Below, one piece after another: positions 13,643-29,853 of a DNA stretch of 64,000 nt (position 1 is its first letter; every line of letters begins with the position of its first letter). Below the pieces are notes generated by a model, which was given only the letters and a program-made list of their open reading frames with translations, did not search any database and was not told the origin of the DNA. The position numbers were made by a program, and so were the translations under genes. Origin of the DNA: Anaeramoeba ignava BMAN (lineage: Eukaryota > Protista > Anaeramoebae); contig JAPDFW010000101.1 of the NCBI GenBank assembly GCA_028826165.1, forward strand, positions 124,001 through 188,000, given 5' to 3'.

Positions 13643-15858
13643 CTGTAAACGTCGATCATATCGGCGAATCAGTCATATCGGCGAAAATAAATAAAAAATA
13701 AATGAAAAAAAAAAAAAAAATTTTTCTTGTTGTTTTTTATTCGTCAATGGTAACGTCAATCGAAGTTTTCCTTGTTGAAAAAGAAGACTTGATGAGATTT
13801 TTTTTGTTTGTTTAAAAGAAAAAAAAAAAAATCATTCATACCGTCGTTTTTTAATTAATTGAAGACAGAAAAAATTTCTTTTGAGAATTATTTTTGTCTT
13901 TAATTTGGAAGAGATTTGATTTAAAAAGAATTGTTGATTTGATTTATTTAATATCAGCTTTTAAAAAGAGTTTTCGAGCACTTTTTAAGCGTGTCATTTT
14001 GGTTTTTGTATTACGAGGAGAAATTATGGAAGGAGAAGACTTCTTTTGAGGAATTTGGGAATTGGATTTATCAAGAGTTTTTTCATTCTGGTTGGAAATA
14101 ATTTCAAATTTCATCCCACTCTTTTTGACTTGATAAAATAATTGAATTTGGAATCATGTCATTTTTGGATTTTTTCTTTTGAACTTCCCATTTGTTTTCT
14201 CTCTTTTGATGACTGAATTTTGAGAAGAACTGATAAACTTTTCTGCATGAGCTTCTTTTCTTTTTGTCGTGTTAAATGTGTTTTAGAAGAATTTTTTCTT
14301 TTTGGTTTCTCTTTTTTGGATGCTTTTCTTTTTTGCTTTCCAAGGAATTTGTTTTCTTCTTCTTTTTATATTGTTTCCTTTTTTTTCTCTCATATTTAGA
14401 ATTGGAATTAGAAGCTTCGATAAATAGTTCTAGACATTCACGATCAAAGCTGTCGATATTATCTCTAATTATTCCAGTTTTTCGAAAAGATCTTGCTACT
14501 GAATTTCCTTCCACTTGATCCCACATTTTCATGCAAGCTTTTGACACTTTTTCTCGCTTGATTTGTGCCGTATCCCCTCTTTTAATCCCCCCTTCGAAAT
14601 AACGTTGATACTTTACTTTCAGTTGACGGAATATCATTTTATCTAAGGGTTGGAGTTGTCCTGTTAGATTTGCCGGAATCATTTGGATCAAAACATGATG
14701 TTTTTCGGCAAGTGTCAAAAAATCTGGATCAAAATGAGCCTTAAAATTATCCATAAAAAGGGCACAAGGAGTTGCAACATTTTTTAAAAAGACTTCTTCG
14801 AACCATTTTTTCATAAGTACTTTAGTCATCCATGCTGCTTTATTAGCGTAAAAATAACCTTTTTTAATTGCAGATCTCATTTGTTTTTCTACTCTTGGTC
14901 CACCTTTGAAAATAAAAGTTAAGGGAAGCTTATACCCATCTCCGCCGATACATCCAACTACTGTACAACCTTCCTTGGGTGATCCATAATGATTCACATA
15001 CACTTCCTTTGCACCTTGTGGACTAATCGTTTTCTCAGGGGGATAAGAAAATCGAAAATTTGTTTCATCCATGTTATAAATAGATTGATAAGTATATACT
15101 GACATAATCTCTTCACACCTTTTATGAAATATTTCAGTTTCTTTTCTTGCATCGAAATCTTTGGGCAATGTTTGGTGAAGACAACTTTTTCTTAAAACCA
15201 GGTGAAATTTTTTCCTAAATCTTCGAACCCAACTTTCTGAGATTCGAGGAGCTCGTGATGGTAAAAATCTTTGCCAAGCTTCTCTAGCGAGATCTTTTGA
15301 GCTGATTGGAATGCCTGCTCTTCGATTATCAATTATCCACTCATAGAGCTGGAGCTGTTGATTTTCGGATAGTCGACTCTTATACTTCCTATTTGAATTC
15401 CTTTTTCCTGTATTTGTGTCCTCAATTCCCAATCCCCCTTCCAGCCAACGATGATAACGAGATGAGAGAGTAGTTCGTGGTATGTTTAAATCTTTCGCTA
15501 ATTTGCTGATAATTCCTCTTTTCCCACCTTCTATAGTTTGGAATAATTCCAGCCAATTGATACCCGAATATGCTCTTCTTGGCTTGATAATTTTAATTTC
15601 ATTTGAATTACCACTCTTTTTAGATTTCCGAACTCGAGCCATTTGACGTTATGATTGACGTTTTTCAGAACAATAAGAAAAAATGAAAATCCAAAAAATC
15701 CCCAAAAAAAAAAAATTTTTTTTTCTGTAAAAAAAAAAATTAACATAAATTTGATTATTAAAGAGACAAGCCTCTTCAAATATTTTCTTTATTTAATGAA
15801 ATTTCATCGATTAAAAAAAATTGGATTTCGTTTTCGCCGATATGTCCGACGTTTACAG
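13643..15858 (-). mobile_element. pogo/Fot1-like (Tc1/mariner superfamily) DNA transposon, 2216 bp, 26-bp TIRs, TA target-site duplication
   Basis: Left TIR CTGTAAACGTCGATCATATCGGCGAA (13643-13668); the right TIR reverse-complements to CTGTAAACGTCGGACATATCGGCGAA (15833-15858), 24/26 identical; TA at 13641-13642 and 15859-15860; encodes a transposase. Confidence 0.95.
14272..15642 (-). CDS. pogo-family transposase (HTH + CENP-B-like HTH + DDE_1; DD35D)
   Basis: LAKDLNIPRTTLS HTH; ISESWVRRFRKKF; catalytic motifs YNMDET, LFMDNFKAH and QLQPLD, with 35 residues between the second and third Asp; AWMT motif; basic C-terminal tail. Confidence 0.93.
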   Translation of the reverse strand: MARVRKSKKSGNSNEIKIIKPRRAYSGINWLELFQTIEGGKRGIISKLAKDLNIPRTTLSSRYHRWLEGGLGIEDTNTGKRNSNRKYKSRLSENQQLQLYEWIIDNRRAGIPISSKDLAREAWQRFLPSRAPRISESWVRRFRKKFHLVLRKSCLHQTLPKDFDARKETEIFHKRCEEIMSVYTYQSIYNMDETNFRFSYPPEKTISPQGAKEVYVNHYGSPKEGCTVVGCIGGDGYKLPLTFIFKGGPRVEKQMRSAIKKGYFYANKAAWMTKVLMKKWFEEVFLKNVATPCALFMDNFKAHFDPDFLTLAEKHHVLIQMIPANLTGQLQPLDKMIFRQLKVKYQRYFEGGIKRGDTAQIKREKVSKACMKMWDQVEGNSVARSFRKTGIIRDNIDSFDRECLELFIEASNSNSKYERKKRKQYKKKKKTNSLESKKEKHPKKRNQKEKILLKHI

Positions 15859-22989: not shown

Positions 22990-25779
22990 ATGTTATCAAA
23001 TTTAAATCCTTCTTCAAGAAAAACAAGTTTTTTCAAAAGAAAAATTCCCAAAACAGAACAAAAAAAAAGAAAATCAAAAAACCAAAAACAAATTAAAAGA
23101 GTTTTATCAATGAGATTAATACATTTCAAAACAAACAAGCCAAGAATACAATTACCAAAAATTAGAAGAAAAAAAATAAAGCAACCTCATAAAATTTATA
23201 TTATAATTGAAGAAATTTATATTCAAAATAAATTGAATCAAATTGAATTTATTGATCCAAAAAAATTCTTGAATAATAGTTTTTCTCGAGAATCAGTTTT
23301 CTCAGAGAATCCATTGGATCCATTGATGATTCCCATGCTAAAAGATTCTAGAAACTTGCTTCCAAATTCTGTTCTAATTGATTCTAATTTAGATCCGATT
23401 GAAATCATCCAAAAAAATTTTCAATCGTTTGAGTTTCAAAAATACAATAACAATTTATTATCTCAATCATCAAATTTGGAATTCTTCAATTATTCTAATC
23501 AAGTCTTAACTGAAAATCACTTGGAAATGATGTTTCAAAAAGAACTTTGTTATAAACCCAATGAATATTATCTTTTAAATCCAGAATTTTCTCAACAATT
23601 TCGAATTAATTTTGTGGAAAAAATATCAAAATTTTGCTGGATTCTAAATTTACATAAGAAAACTTTTTATTATGCATTGAATTATTTTGAAAGATTATTA
23701 AATTCAATTCCAAAAATAGTTGTAAATAATTTAAATCTTGTTATAACAACTTGTATTTTTATTGCTTCAAAAATTCAAGAAATTGATGTTCCTTCAATCA
23801 ATTTTTTCAATCAAATATTAAGTGGAAATACAAATCAAGATCGAAAATCTGAAATTAAAAAAATGGAACTTTTTATTCTTAAAAATCTTGATTATCTTCT
23901 AATTCCTCAAACTCCTTATTGTTTTCTTAAATATTTTTTAAATCGTGCTCGTTTTTTGTTTCCTTTGGATAGGCAAAGTGTTTATAGAAAAATGAATCAA
24001 AATATTAATTTAGCTCCTGAAGTTTCTTTTGTTTCAGAACACTTTACAATTTTGATTAAAAATCTATTTAATTTAGAGAAGAATAAAAACGATAATTATG
24101 ATTTAGTTGATGATACAAATTTAAATACAAATACAAATACAAAATCAAATACAAATACAAATTTAAATACAAATACAAAATTAAATACAAATACAAATAG
24201 AAATACAAAATTAAATTCAAATTTAAATACAAATTCAAATTCAAATATAAATTCAAATATAAATACAAATATAAATACAAATATAAATACAAATTCAAAT
24301 TCAAAATCAAATTCAAATACAAATACAAATACAAATTTAAATACAAATTCAAATACAAATTTAAATACAAATTTAAATTCAAAATTAAATACAAATACAA
24401 ATTTAAATACAAATTTAAATACAAATATAAATTCAAATTCAAATTCAAATTCAAATTCAAATCCAAATACAAATACAAATACAAATTTAAATACAAATAT
24501 AAATACAAATATAAATTCAAAATCAAATTCAAATACAAATTTAAATCCAAAATCAAATACAAATTCAAATACAAATCCAAATTCAAATTCAAATATAAAT
24601 ACAAATTTAAATACAAATTTAAATTCAAATTCAAATATAAATTCAAATACAAATTCAAATACAAATTTAAATACAAATTCAAATACAAACACAAATTCAA
24701 ATTTAAATACAAATACAAATACAAATTTAAATACAAATTCAAATACAAATTCAAATACAAATTTAAATACAAATTTAAATACAAATTCAAATACAAATTT
24801 AAATACAAATTTAAATTTAAATTCAAATACAAATACAAATACAAATTTAAATTCAAATTCAAATCCAAATACAAATTCAAATTCAAATACAAATACAAAT
24901 ACAAATACAAATACAAATTCAAATACAAACACAAATTCAAATTTAAATACAAATTCAAATACAAATATAAATACAAATTCAAATTTAAATACAAATAAAA
25001 ATACAAATTTAAAGTCAAATTCAATTTTAGATTCTATTTTTAATTCAAGTTTAAAAATACATCAAAAAAGAAATCCAAATTCAAAATCAAAGATAAATTC
25101 AAATTCTAAATCAAATCCAATTTTAGATTCTATTTTTAATTCAAATTCAAATTCAAATTCAAATACAGATTCAAATTCAAATTCAAATCCAAATTCAAAT
25201 ACAAATTCAAATTTAAATACAAATATAAATACAAATACAAATACAAATACAAATTCAAAATCAAATTCAAGATCAATTTATGATTCACTTTTTAATTCAA
25301 ATTTAAAATTAAAATCAAAACAAAAAAATAAAAGTAACTTTTTACAAAAAATACAAAAAATTATATTAGAAGAAAATAATGGAAATAATGAAAATGACAT
25401 ATCAGAAATAAAATCTACAACTTGCTTTTCCATGACAAGACTTTTTCGCTTACCAAAATTTGCAGAAAAAATTTATGCTTCTTTATGTGAAACAATTAAT
25501 ATTTCACTTTTTGATGAAAAGTCTCTTCATTTTCTTCCAAGTACAATTGCAGCATCTGTTTTGTCTCAATATTTTGTTCGAGATTCAGAACTCAAATTAA
25601 TTACACGATATTCTTTTGATGATTTAAGAATCTGTAATGAATGGATGTTTAAATATATAAAAATTCCAGTTAATTTTCAACAGGAAAATTCTATTAAAGG
25701 AATTGATCCTTTTAGTCGCCATATTTACAATAAAAATAACAATTTTGATCTATTATTTGGAAAAGATATAAAAAAATAA
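22990..25779 (+). CDS. Cyclin (cyclin E-like) with a very long in-frame Asn-X repeat insertion
   Basis: Cyclin box (RINFVEKI...LHKKTFYYALNYFERLL...TCIFIASKIQEIDVP...MELFILKNLDY..PQTPYCFL) and C-terminal cyclin fold (LHFLPSTIAASVL...LRICNEWM), separated by (N-T/S/L/I/P)n. Confidence 0.85.
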   Translation: MLSNLNPSSRKTSFFKRKIPKTEQKKRKSKNQKQIKRVLSMRLIHFKTNKPRIQLPKIRRKKIKQPHKIYIIIEEIYIQNKLNQIEFIDPKKFLNNSFSRESVFSENPLDPLMIPMLKDSRNLLPNSVLIDSNLDPIEIIQKNFQSFEFQKYNNNLLSQSSNLEFFNYSNQVLTENHLEMMFQKELCYKPNEYYLLNPEFSQQFRINFVEKISKFCWILNLHKKTFYYALNYFERLLNSIPKIVVNNLNLVITTCIFIASKIQEIDVPSINFFNQILSGNTNQDRKSEIKKMELFILKNLDYLLIPQTPYCFLKYFLNRARFLFPLDRQSVYRKMNQNINLAPEVSFVSEHFTILIKNLFNLEKNKNDNYDLVDDTNLNTNTNTKSNTNTNLNTNTKLNTNTNRNTKLNSNLNTNSNSNINSNINTNINTNINTNSNSKSNSNTNTNTNLNTNSNTNLNTNLNSKLNTNTNLNTNLNTNINSNSNSNSNSNPNTNTNTNLNTNINTNINSKSNSNTNLNPKSNTNSNTNPNSNSNINTNLNTNLNSNSNINSNTNSNTNLNTNSNTNTNSNLNTNTNTNLNTNSNTNSNTNLNTNLNTNSNTNLNTNLNLNSNTNTNTNLNSNSNPNTNSNSNTNTNTNTNTNSNTNTNSNLNTNSNTNINTNSNLNTNKNTNLKSNSILDSIFNSSLKIHQKRNPNSKSKINSNSKSNPILDSIFNSNSNSNSNTDSNSNSNPNSNTNSNLNTNINTNTNTNTNSKSNSRSIYDSLFNSNLKLKSKQKNKSNFLQKIQKIILEENNGNNENDISEIKSTTCFSMTRLFRLPKFAEKIYASLCETINISLFDEKSLHFLPSTIAASVLSQYFVRDSELKLITRYSFDDLRICNEWMFKYIKIPVNFQQENSIKGIDPFSRHIYNKNNNFDLLFGKDIKK
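24115..25300 (+). repeat. Coding hexamer repeat AAT-NNA (Asn-X)n inside the cyclin
   Basis: Directly visible; frame stays open throughout. Confidence 0.9.
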
Positions 25780-25917: not shown

Positions 25918-28900
25918 ATGGAAACTGTTAAATTTTATGAATTTTTACCAAATCGTTTATATTTTTTTGGATCTCAAAATTTACTTGATTCAAGTCAATC
26001 AATAGATTATTATTTTACAATAGAAACTGAATTTCATTATGATCCTTTTTTATTTGATTTTGGTCCTTTTAATCTTTCTCAATTAACTCGTTTTTGTCGT
26101 TTATTACATTCAAAACTTCAAGTATATATTTTATTTTTATTCTTTTTTTTAACGATTATTTTTAACATTTCAAATTCAAATCTAATTAAAATTTAAATTA
26201 AAATTATAATTAAAATTAAAATTAAAATCAAAATTAAATTTATAATTAAAATTAAATTTATAATTAAAATTATTATAATTAAAATCATAATTAAAATTAA
26301 AATTAAATTAAAATTCAAAATTTAAATTAAAATTATAATTAAAATTAAAATTAAAATTAAAATTAAAATTAAAATTAAAATTAAAATTAAAATTAAAATT
26401 ATAATTATAATTAAAATTAAAATTAAAATTAAAATTAAAATTTAAAATTAATATTAAAAATTAAATTATAATCAAAATTAAAATCAAATTAAAATTAAAA
26501 TTAAAAATTAAAAATTAATATTAAATTAAATTTAAAATTAATATTTAAAATTAAAATTCAAAATTTTTATAATTAAAATTAAATTTATAATTAAAATTAA
26601 AATTAAAAATTAAAATTAAAATTAAAATTAAAATTAAAATTAAAATTAAAATTAAAATTAAAATTAAAATTAAATTAAAATTGAATTAAAATTAAAATTA
26701 TAATTAAAATTAAAATTAAAATTAAAATTAAAATTAAATTAAAATTAAAATTTAAATTAAAATTTAAATTAAAATTAAAATTAAAATTAAAATTAAAATT
26801 TAAAATTAAAATTAAATTAAAATTAAAATTAATATTAAAATTAAAATTTAAATTAAAATTAAAATTATAATTAAAATTAAAATTAATATTAAAATTAAAA
26901 TTAAAATTAAAATTAAAAATTAAAATTAAAATTAAAATTTAAAATTTATAATTAAAATTAATATTAAAATCAAAATTAAAATTTAAAATTAAAATCATAA
27001 TTAAAATTAAAATTAAAATTAAAATTAAAATTAAAATTAATATTAAAATTAATATTAAAATTAAAATTAAAATTATAATTAAAATTAAAATTAAAATTAA
27101 AATCAAAATTTATAATTAAAATTATTAAAATTCAAATTCAAATTAAAAATTAAAATTAATTAAAATCAAAATTTATAATTAAAATTAAATTTATAATTAA
27201 AATTAAAATCAATATTAAAATTAATATTAAAATTAAATTTTAGGATCCTAAACTTAAAAATAAAAGAATTTTCTTTTATTCACTTTCTGATTCACAAAAA
27301 TTCACAAATTCAGCACTTTTAATAAGTTCATTTATGGTAATAGTGATGCATAAAACACCAGAGGAAGCATTTAAACCATTTGAAAATTGTGATACATTTG
27401 TTGGATTTCGAGATGCATCATATGATCCACCTACATTTTTACTTTCGATTCAAGATGTTTTAAATGGATTATATAAAGCTATACAATTTAATTTTTATGA
27501 TTGGACTACTTTTTCAATTGAAGAATATGAATATCATGAAAAAGTTGAAAATGGTTATTTAAATTGGATTATTCCTGAAAAACTTCTTGCTTTTGGTTCA
27601 CCAAGAGATCTTCCTTCTAAATCTTGTTTTTTTGTTGATGAAGAAGATAATGAAAATGAGGATAATGAAGATAATGGAAATTATAATGAAACTAAAAATG
27701 ATCAAAATTTAGTTAATCAAGAAAATCCAATTATTCCAGAAAATCAAATTAATCAAGAAATTAATCAAGAAATCAATAAAGAAATTAATCAAGAAATTAA
27801 TCAAGAAATTAATCAAGAAATTAATCAAGAAATTAATCAAGAAATTAATCAAGAAATTAATCAAGAAATTAATCAAGAAATCAATAAAGAAATTAATCAA
27901 GAAATTAATCAAGAAATTAATCAAGAAATCATTAAAGAAATTAATCAAGAAATTAATCAAGAAATTAATCAAGACTTAAATAATAAAGAAACTTCAATGA
28001 ATATTGACCCCTCACAACCTAAAATTGAATATTTCGATGAAAATGATTTAAATTTCCAATATTGGACATCAAGTCAACATCTTGAATATTTTAAAAAGCA
28101 TAATATTACTTGCATTATCAGATTAAACCTCCCTTTATATGACCCTCAAATTTTTACCAAAAATGATATTTCACATTATGATCTTTATTTTGAAGATGGA
28201 AGTGTTCCTTCTTGGGAAATTATAAACTCATTCTTGAATATTGTAGAACAAGAAATTGAAACAAATAACAAAATTGGAACAAATCCAAATGAATTAGAAA
28301 ATTCAGAACAATCCAAAGACAAAGATCAAGACAAAGATCAAGAAAATCGTGAAAGAGTTGTTGCAGTTCATTGCTTTGGGATTGATACTCAAGTTTTAAT
28401 GGCTGATTTTTCTTCCAGAAAAATTCAAAATATTCAACCCAAAGATCAAGTTATGGGAATCGATTATTCCCCAAAAAAAGTAAAAACTATTATTCAAGGA
28501 AAAGGCAAATTATTTGAAGTTAAAAGAGCTCATCAAGAAAAATATATTGTTAGTGAAAAACATATTTTGTGTCTTCTGTTAAACAAGCAAACAAACAGAC
28601 AAATTGATATTCAATTCCAAAATGACGATTACTGGTTTTTTTTCCGTTATTTTGATTCTAATCACAATTTAGTTACAAAACGTTTTCCTGTTTTTCAAAA
28701 AAATATCGGTATTGAACAGAATGTGATCAATTTCTGTTGGAAAAATCAAACACTTTTTGATTCAAATTTTAATTATCTTGGAAAAAATCAAAAAATGGAA
28801 AAATTGATAATTGAAGAAAAAGACTTTTTGGATGTGAAAAGGAATTTTTCACGCGCATTTCTAGAAATGGAATATTATTACAAAAATAATTACGCAGTTG

Positions 28901-29853
28901 ATTTTGGTGATCGTATTGAAATTACTGTTGAAAAATATCTTCAGAAAACAAAAGAATGGAAAAACAATCATTCAGGATATTCATCATTTATGAATCAAAA
29001 TCAATGCGAATCAAATTGGAATTTGAATCAGAAAACAAATGGAAAAAATCTCAATTTGGATTTGCATGATATTGAAGTTTCTTTATATAAAAAACAGGGA
29101 AATTTTTATGGATTTGAATTGGAAGAAAAAGATCCTCGATTTTTATTAAAAGATTATACTGTTGTTCATAATTGTAAAGCAGGATTAGGAAGAACAGGAA
29201 CATTGATATCAATTTATTTAATGAAAAACTATAATTTTTCAGTTAGAGAAGCTATTGGTTTTTTAAGACTTTGTAGACCTGGTTCTGTTGTTGGTCATCA
29301 ACAACAATTTTTGGAAAAAATTAGTGATGAAGTTCAAGAATTAATAAAAGGAGGAAAACAAGTTCAAAAGAAAATTAATAAGATTGTTTCAAGTATTAAT
29401 AATGGATATTATCAAGATTATTTATATGAACAAGAAAATGTGAATGAAAATGTGAATGAAAATTTGAATGAAAATTTAAATCAAAATTTGGATGAAAATT
29501 TGAATGAAAATTTGAATGAAAATTTAAATGAAAATTTAAATGAAAATGTGAATCAAAATCAAGAAATTATTAAAGGAGATGAATTGATTGAATCTCAAAA
29601 AACAGCTCAACAAATGATAATAGAAAATTTAGAAGAATCTAAAAGAAAACAACAAACTCCAGATCAAACTCCAACTAAAACTCCAGATCAAACTCCAAAT
29701 CAAACTCCAACTAAAACTCCAAATCAAACTCCAGATCAACCTAAAAATTATAAAGCAATTCTTGCTCATAAAAGAATAGAATTATTACAAAAAAAACAAC
29801 AACATCATCAAAATCAAAATATTAAAAATCAACAAGAAAATTTAAAGAAATAA
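25918..29853 (+). CDS. CDC14: CDC14 dual-specificity phosphatase precursor containing an intein; exons 25918-26121 and 27244-29853
   Basis: DSPn domain (YEFLPNRLYF...HYDPFLFDFGPFNLSQLTRFC; FRDASY; YEYHEKVENGYLNWIIPEKLLAF), IIRLN...HYDLYFEDGSVP and the split signature VAVH|intein|CKAGLGRTG...LRLCRPGSVVGHQQ; GT..TAG intron 26122-27243. Confidence 0.95.
26122..27243 (+). repeat. CDC14 intron (1122 nt) filled with (AAAATT)n
   Basis: GTATAT donor and TTTTAG acceptor; phase 0 joining gives SKLQ|DPKLKNKRI, as expected for CDC14. Confidence 0.9.
27745..27975 (+). repeat. Coding 12-bp repeat (INQE)n within CDC14
   Basis: ATTAATCAAGAA tandem units, in frame. Confidence 0.9.
28372..29172 (+). mobile_element. 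Intein (VMA-type mini-intein, 267 aa, no recognisable homing endonuclease) inserted before the CDC14 catalytic Cys
   Basis: Block A CFGIDTQVLMAD; IQNIQPKDQVMG; block B YIVSEKHILCL; block F FYGFELE..DPRFLLKD; block G TVVHN followed by +1 Cys. Removing it restores VAVHCKAGLGRTG exactly. Confidence 0.96.

What the first reader, a model, noticed from the sequence alone, without database searches (positions are those of the whole stretch)
28372..29172. Intein inserted into the CDC14 active-site motif: the catalytic Cys doubles as the splicing nucleophile
Seen: the invariant PTP/DSP signature HCxxGxxR is split as VAVH | CFGIDTQVLMAD...(267 aa)...DYTVVHN | CKAGLGRTG. All canonical class 1 splicing residues are present (Cys1, block B His in SEKH, penultimate His, terminal Asn, Cys+1). 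Known: eukaryotic nuclear inteins are rare and mostly occur in fungal and algal genes such as VMA1, PRP8, GLT1, CHS2 and RNA polymerase subunits; Anaeramoeba species are an intein-rich exception. Inference: the precursor should be inactive until spliced, because the P-loop is interrupted and its Cys is used for transesterification. This would place a mitotic-exit phosphatase under protein-splicing control, potentially as a redox- or metal-sensitive switch in an anaerobe. Whether this insertion site has already been catalogued cannot be checked here.
Basis: partly seen in the sequence, partly recalled or inferred. Interest (0 to 1): 0.92.

Follow-up and report, generated by a model that had tools for sequence, protein, structure and literature searches.

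The report
Known intein in Anaeramoeba CDC14 phosphatases
A real self-splicing protein insert (intein) sits directly before the catalytic cysteine of a CDC14 phosphatase in the intein-rich protist Anaeramoeba ignava, but a sister copy with the same insertion is already named intein-containing CDC14 in GenBank, the cell also has an uninterrupted CDC14, and nothing found here points to a regulatory switch.

Summary
Observation confirmed. 28372-29172 is an in-frame, 267-aa class 1 Hint intein of the VMA1/Prp8 type (Pfam E 6.6e-16; model matches the Prp8 intein at Z 19.5), with Cys1, His64, His266 and Asn267. Its +1 residue is the catalytic Cys of CDC14's HCKAGLGR motif. It has no detectable homing endonuclease.

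The genome is Anaeramoeba ignava. Three of its four CDC14 genes carry this intein at the same site and form one clade (99.5/100). The fourth is intein-free and groups with the intein-free A. flamelloides CDC14s. This fits one invasion followed by gene duplication.

It is not new. One sister copy is GenBank KAJ5077292.1, 'intein-containing cell division cycle 14', from a genome whose 103 inteins were surveyed in 2023 (PMC10710043). A catalytic Cys at +1 also has precedent in ribonucleotide reductase (PMC2677866).

Splicing is inferred, not shown. No RNA-labelled run was available. The switch idea has no positive support, and the intein-free paralog means Cdc14 activity as a whole cannot depend on splicing. 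Best reading: a trapped selfish mini-intein in a site from which it cannot easily be lost. The scan noted other inteins in this genome before, but not CDC14.

The parts
25918..26121 (+). CDC14 exon 1 (68 codons, start of the DSPn domain)
   Evidence: Pfam DSPn positions 1-60, E 2.5e-15; ATG at 25918 and GT donor at 26122
26122..27243 (+). Predicted GT-AG intron, mostly an AATTAA-type tandem repeat
   Evidence: Donor and acceptor read from the sequence; repeat 26184-27237; not confirmed by RNA
27244..29853 (+). CDC14 exon 2: rest of DSPn, catalytic domain with the intein, low-complexity tail
   Evidence: 869-codon open frame; DSPn and DSPc matches
27746..27974 (+). 12-nt tandem repeat coding QEIN repeats in an N-extein loop
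   Evidence: TRF, 19 copies
28195..28197 (+). General-acid Asp of the FEDG loop (N-extein), intact
   Evidence: xDG motif kept in all four paralogs and most other CDC14s; role from established PTP/DSP chemistry
28360..28371 (+). N-extein end VAVH; His-1 of the HCX5R signature
28372..29172 (+). 267-aa class 1 mini-intein, Hom_end_hint (VMA1/Prp8) family, no endonuclease
28372..28587 (+). N-terminal Hint part (residues 1-72): Cys1 at 28372 and block B S-x-x-His64 at 28561
   Evidence: pLDDT 75-95; dN about 0.3 against dS about 1.0-1.3 among paralogs
28588..28896 (+). About 100-aa insert (three strands plus helices), weakly AP2-like; probably a remnant DNA-binding module
   Evidence: No Pfam match; VIA Z 4.8-5.5 to Plasmodium SIP2 AP2 and Toxoplasma mitoribosome chains, which is weak; weak similarity to the Ariadne intein of the same genome, E 0.018 in a small set
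28990..29061 (+). Unconserved 24-aa linker where relatives carry the endonuclease domain
   Evidence: 8-21% identity among paralogs, dN at or above dS; pLDDT below 50 for residues 203-231
29062..29172 (+). C-terminal Hint part: block F (FYGFEL), penultimate His266, terminal Asn267
29173..29193 (+). C-extein start CKAGLGR: the whole CX5R P-loop; Cys+1 is both the splicing nucleophile and the phosphatase nucleophile
   Evidence: Same loop as CDC14A/B structures (query was the intein-free paralog)

Best explanation
This is a selfish, now immobile class 1 mini-intein. Shown: it is translated in frame between His-1 and the catalytic Cys of a CDC14 paralog and has all splicing residues. Inferred from established class 1 chemistry: Cys1 forms a thioester with His-1, the phosphatase Cys+1 attacks it, Asn267 cyclises with help from His266 to release the intein, and an S-to-N shift makes the His-Cys peptide bond and frees the thiol. 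The result is an ordinary Cdc14, so the Cys does the two jobs one after the other. History, inferred from the tree: a VMA1/Prp8-type intein with an endonuclease invaded one CDC14 duplicate once, lost its endonuclease, and was copied along as the gene duplicated twice more. It persists because inteins need a Cys, Ser or Thr at +1, favour invariant motifs, and can only be lost here by an exact 801-nt deletion. Splicing is probably constitutive in this reducing anaerobe.
For: Hint family and fold. Invariant catalytic residues. Same site in three paralogs with 42-48% intein identity and 58-66% extein identity. The intein-bearing exteins form one clade at 99.5/100 and the three inteins form one clade at FastTree 0.96. 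Hint blocks are under purifying selection while the endonuclease-position linker drifts. No LAGLIDADG or Hom_end match, unlike the IF5B intein. At least two dozen related inteins lie in other conserved motifs of this genome, mostly Walker A GK|S/T. Precedent for a catalytic Cys at +1 in NrdA. Host catalytic Asp, Cys and Arg are intact in all copies.
Against: Splicing of this intein has not been observed, and no RNA-labelled run was available. The non-splicing 100-aa insert keeps 29-39% identity with dN/dS of about 0.45-0.65 (rough, near saturation), more than a free linker would; this could be a folding constraint or an acquired role. The donor intein is unresolved.
Confidence: 0.82

Rival explanations
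1. Conditional protein splicing: the intein has been co-opted as a redox or metal gate on a sub-family of three CDC14 paralogs. A Cys1/Cys+1 disulfide or Zn/Cu binding would hold the precursor inactive under oxygen stress and shield the oxidation-prone catalytic Cys, while the intein-free paralog supplies basal activity.
For: Precedents exist: MoaA disulfide trapping, and Zn/Cu inhibition of Prp8 and DnaB inteins (PMC10663303). Human Cdc14B is inactivated by H2O2. Another A. ignava intein was assayed with and without TCEP and Zn (figure legend only). The intein has been kept in three diverged paralogs without an endonuclease. The closest solved structure is the Zn-bound Prp8 intein.
Against: No feature specific to regulation was found. 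The only Cys shared by the three inteins are Cys1 and Cys67, and Cys67 is common in the family. There is no Cys in the last N-extein residues. Retention is expected anyway at a site that needs exact deletion. A. flamelloides CDC14s lack the intein. The genome has about 100 inteins in many unrelated functions, which fits promiscuous spread.
Confidence: 0.1
2. The intein splices poorly or only cleaves, so the three intein-bearing copies are weak or dead phosphatases, and the intein-free paralog does the work.
For: Block B has Ser in place of the canonical Thr, a redundant intein-free copy exists, and the intein clade has long low-complexity insertions.
Against: All splicing and phosphatase catalytic residues are kept in all three copies despite dS near 1. 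Sce VMA1 and Prp8 inteins, which are known to splice, share the same block F Gly pattern.
Confidence: 0.06
3. The 801 nt are an RNA intron or an assembly artefact.
For: No RNA-labelled run could be laid on it.
Against: No intron termini in any register. It codes a full Hint fold in frame in three paralogs on different contigs. A public contig holds it unbroken.
Confidence: 0.02

Closest known systems
A. ignava 'intein-containing cell division cycle 14 isoform a precursor', KAJ5077292.1 / UniRef100_A0A9Q0REL5 (P0001)
   Same: Same genome, same host family, same VAVH|CKAGLGRTG site, allelic intein of 268 aa with 42% identity
   Different: A different paralog (contig C1). The name given to the window's own copy is hidden by the tools, so its listing is likely but was not seen.
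Anaeramoeba intein set of Gallot-Lavallee et al. 2023 (PMC10710043)
   Same: Same species; 103 inteins including 18 novel host classes, inteins in paralogs, spread among unrelated conserved motifs. This intein fits the VMA/Prp8-related group (cluster 15 is likely but unverified).
   Different: The main text never names CDC14 or any phosphatase. Dataset S1 could not be read, so the dual role of the Cys does not appear to have been discussed in print.
S. cerevisiae VMA1 (PI-SceI) domain I and Cryptococcus Prp8 mini-intein (Pfam PF05203)
   Same: Hint fold, block F Gly, HN|C end; Foldseek E 1.1e-10 to 1gpp; VIA Z 19.5, rmsd 2.3 A over 141 residues to 6owu
   Different: No LAGLIDADG domain, a 100-aa insert not found in those structures, and a phosphatase host
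NrdA/NrdJ ribonucleotide reductase inteins (PMC2677866)
   Same: Insertion directly N-terminal to the catalytic thiyl-radical site, described as the most frequent site in these enzymes
   Different: Different host chemistry (radical Cys against phospho-Cys nucleophile); prokaryotic and viral hosts
Conditionally splicing inteins (Pab MoaA, Cne Prp8, Msm DnaB; PMC10663303)
   Same: Cys-dependent splicing in a host enzyme that is sensitive to oxidation
   Different: Those have experimental support. Here there is none, and the MoaA-type N-extein Cys is absent.

Membership tests
Class 1 intein (Hint) | In-frame insert whose removal restores a conserved host protein | tested here: met
   Alignment with the intein-free paralog and other CDC14s shows one clean gap between AVH and CKAG
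Class 1 intein (Hint) | Hint domain by sequence and fold | tested here: met
   PF05203 E 6.6e-16; Foldseek and VIA matches to VMA1 and Prp8 inteins
Class 1 intein (Hint) | Cys/Ser1, block B His, penultimate His, terminal Asn, Cys/Ser/Thr at +1 | tested here: met
   C1, H64, H266, N267 and C+1; block B reads SEKH, with Ser for the canonical Thr
Class 1 intein (Hint) | Retained in mRNA | tested here: inconclusive
   No RNA-labelled run; run X1 of unknown type holds it unbroken; no intron termini
Class 1 intein (Hint) | Excises itself and ligates the exteins | not testable with these tools
   Needs mass spectrometry or an in vitro assay
Full-length homing intein (LAGLIDADG) | Homing endonuclease domain between the Hint halves | tested here: not met
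   No Hom_end or LAGLIDADG match at E up to 1; only about 24 disordered residues at that position
CDC14 phosphatase | DSPn plus DSPc domains with an HCKAGLGRTG loop and an xDG general acid | tested here: met
   49% identity to a fish CDC14A over 235 columns
CDC14 phosphatase | Phosphatase activity on CDK sites and a role in mitotic exit | not testable with these tools
   Needs assays
Conditionally splicing intein | Splicing rate controlled by a physiological cue in the native host | not testable with these tools
   No experimental data found; no paper holds both Anaeramoeba and Cdc14
Conditionally splicing intein | Sequence hallmark of a redox trap (N-extein Cys near Cys1, or an extra conserved Cys) | tested here: not met
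   No Cys in VAVH; only Cys1 and the family-common Cys67 are shared. A Cys1/Cys+1 pairing cannot be excluded.

The most novel reading that the evidence does not exclude
The three intein-bearing CDC14 paralogs form a sub-family whose activation is gated by conditional splicing. The catalytic Cys is locked in the precursor (with Cys1 or a metal) during oxygen or metal stress and freed on splicing, alongside a constitutive intein-free paralog. It would be a eukaryotic signalling enzyme regulated by an intein through its own nucleophile. A second, unrelated intein family in the P-loop of myotubularins of the same genome would offer a natural comparison.
Probability: 0.1. Interest if true: 0.75.

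Novelty: already known. Interest (0 to 1): 0.27.

Why it matters
As it stands, this is a clear example of why inteins lodge in active sites. It also seems to be confined to one species: no other intein before a CX5R Cys appeared among the 150 best relatives from 1.84 billion proteins, or in the viral and metagenome scans. The host class is already annotated, so the gain is descriptive: three of four paralogs carry it, the invasion happened once, the endonuclease is lost, and the empty paralog is a built-in control. It would matter more if splicing proved conditional, since it would then give a testable case of intein control over a eukaryotic phosphatase. It might also serve as a natural splicing-activated phosphatase for protein engineering.

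Tried and rejected
1. Search with the intein alone found nothing at that length range; searching within the full-length protein found the named paralog.
2. Allelic inteins outside A. ignava: none among the 150 best representatives, none in the 8 of 14 viral loci whose flanks could be read, none in the metagenome scan (pattern-based, low sensitivity). Of the 120 listed CDC14 hits only the paralog carries a Hint domain.
3. Donor of the intein: the Ariadne E3 ligase intein looked closest by an extended match, but the Hint core is nearer to the intein of an HBS1/eRF3-like GTPase (45-48%, FastTree 0.85) and the insert alone matches Ariadne only at E 0.018. Unresolved.
4. Shared origin with the myotubularin inteins was rejected: different site (R|T), Ser1, and no significant similarity.
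5. The precursor structure model was uninformative (pLDDT 49.6).
6. Loss of the Cys in the AFC motif, which I recall as the back-door Cys of CDC14B, in the intein-bearing copies: most CDC14s have Ser there (81 of 93 scored), so it means little.
7. NCBIfam gave nothing useful. The paper's supplement is not held. One search, a bacterial promoter scan, was irrelevant.

Full report
1. The observation. The window holds a two-exon CDC14 gene on the + strand: exon 1 at 25918-26121, a predicted GT-AG intron at 26122-27243, and exon 2 at 27244-29853. His is at 28369-28371, then 801 nt in frame begin with Cys and end with His-Asn at 29172, then CKAGLGRTG follows. The insert matches Pfam Hom_end_hint over the whole profile (E 6.6e-16). 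Its nearest solved relatives by sequence are the Cryptococcus Prp8 and yeast VMA1 inteins. An AlphaFold model is confident in both Hint halves and matches PI-SceI domain I (Foldseek E 1.1e-10) and the Prp8 intein (Z 19.5, rmsd 2.3 A over 141 residues). Cys1, His64, His266 and Asn267 are invariant in 37 aligned inteins. The insert has no spliceosomal ends in any of its five equivalent registers. One contig of a public run of unknown type spans it with one silent change; this argues against an assembly error but says nothing about RNA.

2. Anatomy. Residues 1-72 and 231-267 are the Hint halves. Residues 73-175 are an insert of three strands plus helices with no Pfam match and only weak likeness to AP2-type domains (Z 4.8-5.5). 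Residues 176-206 are conserved in the family. Residues 207-230 are an unconserved linker where relatives carry the endonuclease. No LAGLIDADG or Hom_end signal remains, whereas the IF5B intein of the same genome still gives a weak one. It is therefore a mini-intein that cannot home by itself. The general-acid Asp and the loop Arg are intact.

3. Context in the genome. The assembly is 42.8 Mb in 147 contigs and is Anaeramoeba ignava, judged from named proteins that match its loci exactly. It has four CDC14 genes. Three (this one, C71 and C1) carry the intein at the same VAVH|C site, 267-277 aa long and 42-48% identical. The fourth (C116) reads IIAVHCKAGLGRTG without interruption. In a tree of 41 extein sequences (235 columns, LG+G4) the three intein-bearing copies form one clade at 99.5/100, and the empty copy groups with the intein-free A. 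flamelloides CDC14s at 78/92. The three inteins also group together. The simplest history is one invasion of a duplicate followed by two duplications; homing between paralogs before endonuclease loss is not excluded. Between paralogs the Hint blocks show dN about 0.3 against dS about 1, and the linker shows dN at or above dS (crude counts on AT-rich, nearly saturated DNA). Splicing capacity is being maintained, as expected if the products are needed.

4. Elsewhere. A profile search of 1.84 billion proteins found 5,678 relatives. Among the best 150, only the C1 paralog has an intein before a CX5R Cys; most others sit at Walker A GK|S/T sites. Viral and metagenome scans found no allelic copy. 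All 119 other CDC14 hits listed, including both A. flamelloides strains, have a contiguous motif. The site therefore seems confined to A. ignava. The donor is unresolved.

5. Mechanism. Shown: all residues for class 1 splicing are present, and Cys+1 is the phosphatase nucleophile. Inferred from established chemistry: an N-to-S shift at Cys1, transesterification to Cys+1, Asn267 cyclisation, and an S-to-N shift that frees the thiol and makes the His-Cys bond. The precursor is probably inactive, because a 267-residue domain sits between the central strand and the P-loop; I could not test this. The dual use of the Cys is what one expects from two general rules: inteins need a Cys, Ser or Thr at +1, and they persist in invariant motifs. 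I put selfish persistence with constitutive splicing at 0.82, a co-opted redox or metal gate at 0.10, crippled splicing at 0.06, and intron or artefact at 0.02. The gate has precedents and Cdc14B is H2O2-sensitive, but nothing here is specific to it, and the intein-free paralog means total Cdc14 activity cannot hang on splicing.

6. What is known. GenBank KAJ5077292.1, the C1 paralog, is named 'intein-containing cell division cycle 14 isoform a precursor [Anaeramoeba ignava]'. The genome's 103 inteins were surveyed by Gallot-Lavallee et al. 2023, with 18 novel host classes listed in Dataset S1. The main text names no phosphatase, the dataset was not available, and the name of the window's own copy is hidden by the tools. 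So the site is catalogued at annotation level, though I found no discussion of its chemistry in print. Insertion directly before a catalytic Cys site is also known: it is the most frequent site in class I and II ribonucleotide reductases (PMC2677866).

7. A related sighting. A note from this scan (s1-698173) pointed to myotubularins. I checked. Four myotubularin genes are split at the same profile position. Two were read: they carry 370-372 aa Ser1 inteins at HCSDGWDR|T, unrelated to the CDC14 intein. The PTP-type P-loop has thus been invaded twice independently in this genome, at two different positions. This supports general opportunism at conserved motifs more than a purpose special to CDC14.

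8. Verdict. Real, correctly read and chemically neat, but already annotated and best explained as a trapped selfish element. Novelty: already known. Interest 0.27.

Noticed in passing
G000 C64, C35, C75, C112 (L072, L073, L074, L077): Four of about ten myotubularin genes are split at the P-loop. In the two that were read, a 370-372 aa Ser1 intein lies at HCSDGWDR|T and is unrelated to the CDC14 intein; the other myotubularins are contiguous there.
   Followed up: partly
L024 and L025 (G000 C61, C60); P0048 = KAJ5076673.1: Two Ariadne RBR E3 ligase paralogs carry 550- and 513-aa inteins before a RING2 Cys (SYYT|CNRY), already named intein-containing in GenBank. They weakly share the 100-aa insert of the CDC14 intein, and Pfam finds no endonuclease in the 550-aa one.
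   Followed up: partly
L004, L006, L009, L011, L012, L015, L040, L041, L044: Related inteins at GK|S/T or DK|T motifs of hosts that look by eye like HBS1/eRF3-type GTPases, Lon, an XPB-like helicase, a clamp-loader-like ATPase, dynein and P-type ATPases; consistent with the published survey.
   Followed up: no
window 22990-25779 (+): A cyclin N-domain gene (E 5.6e-20) ends 139 nt upstream of the CDC14 start codon; two cell-cycle genes lie side by side, probably by chance.
   Followed up: no
window 14272-15642 (-): Intact-looking pogo/Tc5-type DDE_1 transposase ORF with an HTH domain in the most GC-rich part of the window.
   Followed up: no
P0004-P0019 and others: Many environmental proteins carry two inteins back to back or a few residues apart, for example one intein's terminal HN followed directly by the Cys1 of the next, often at Walker A motifs.
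   Followed up: no
P0079, P0083, P0098, P0105, P0127: Related inteins follow a GNHD motif, which by eye resembles the metal-binding motif of calcineurin-like metallophosphoesterases, so other phosphoesterase active sites may also be targets. The flanks come from a rough script and were not verified.
   Followed up: no
window 27589-27600 and paralogs: The Cys of the AFC motif seen in human CDC14B, A. flamelloides and the intein-free paralog is Gly, Ala or Ser in the three intein-bearing copies; most CDC14s have Ser.
   Followed up: yes
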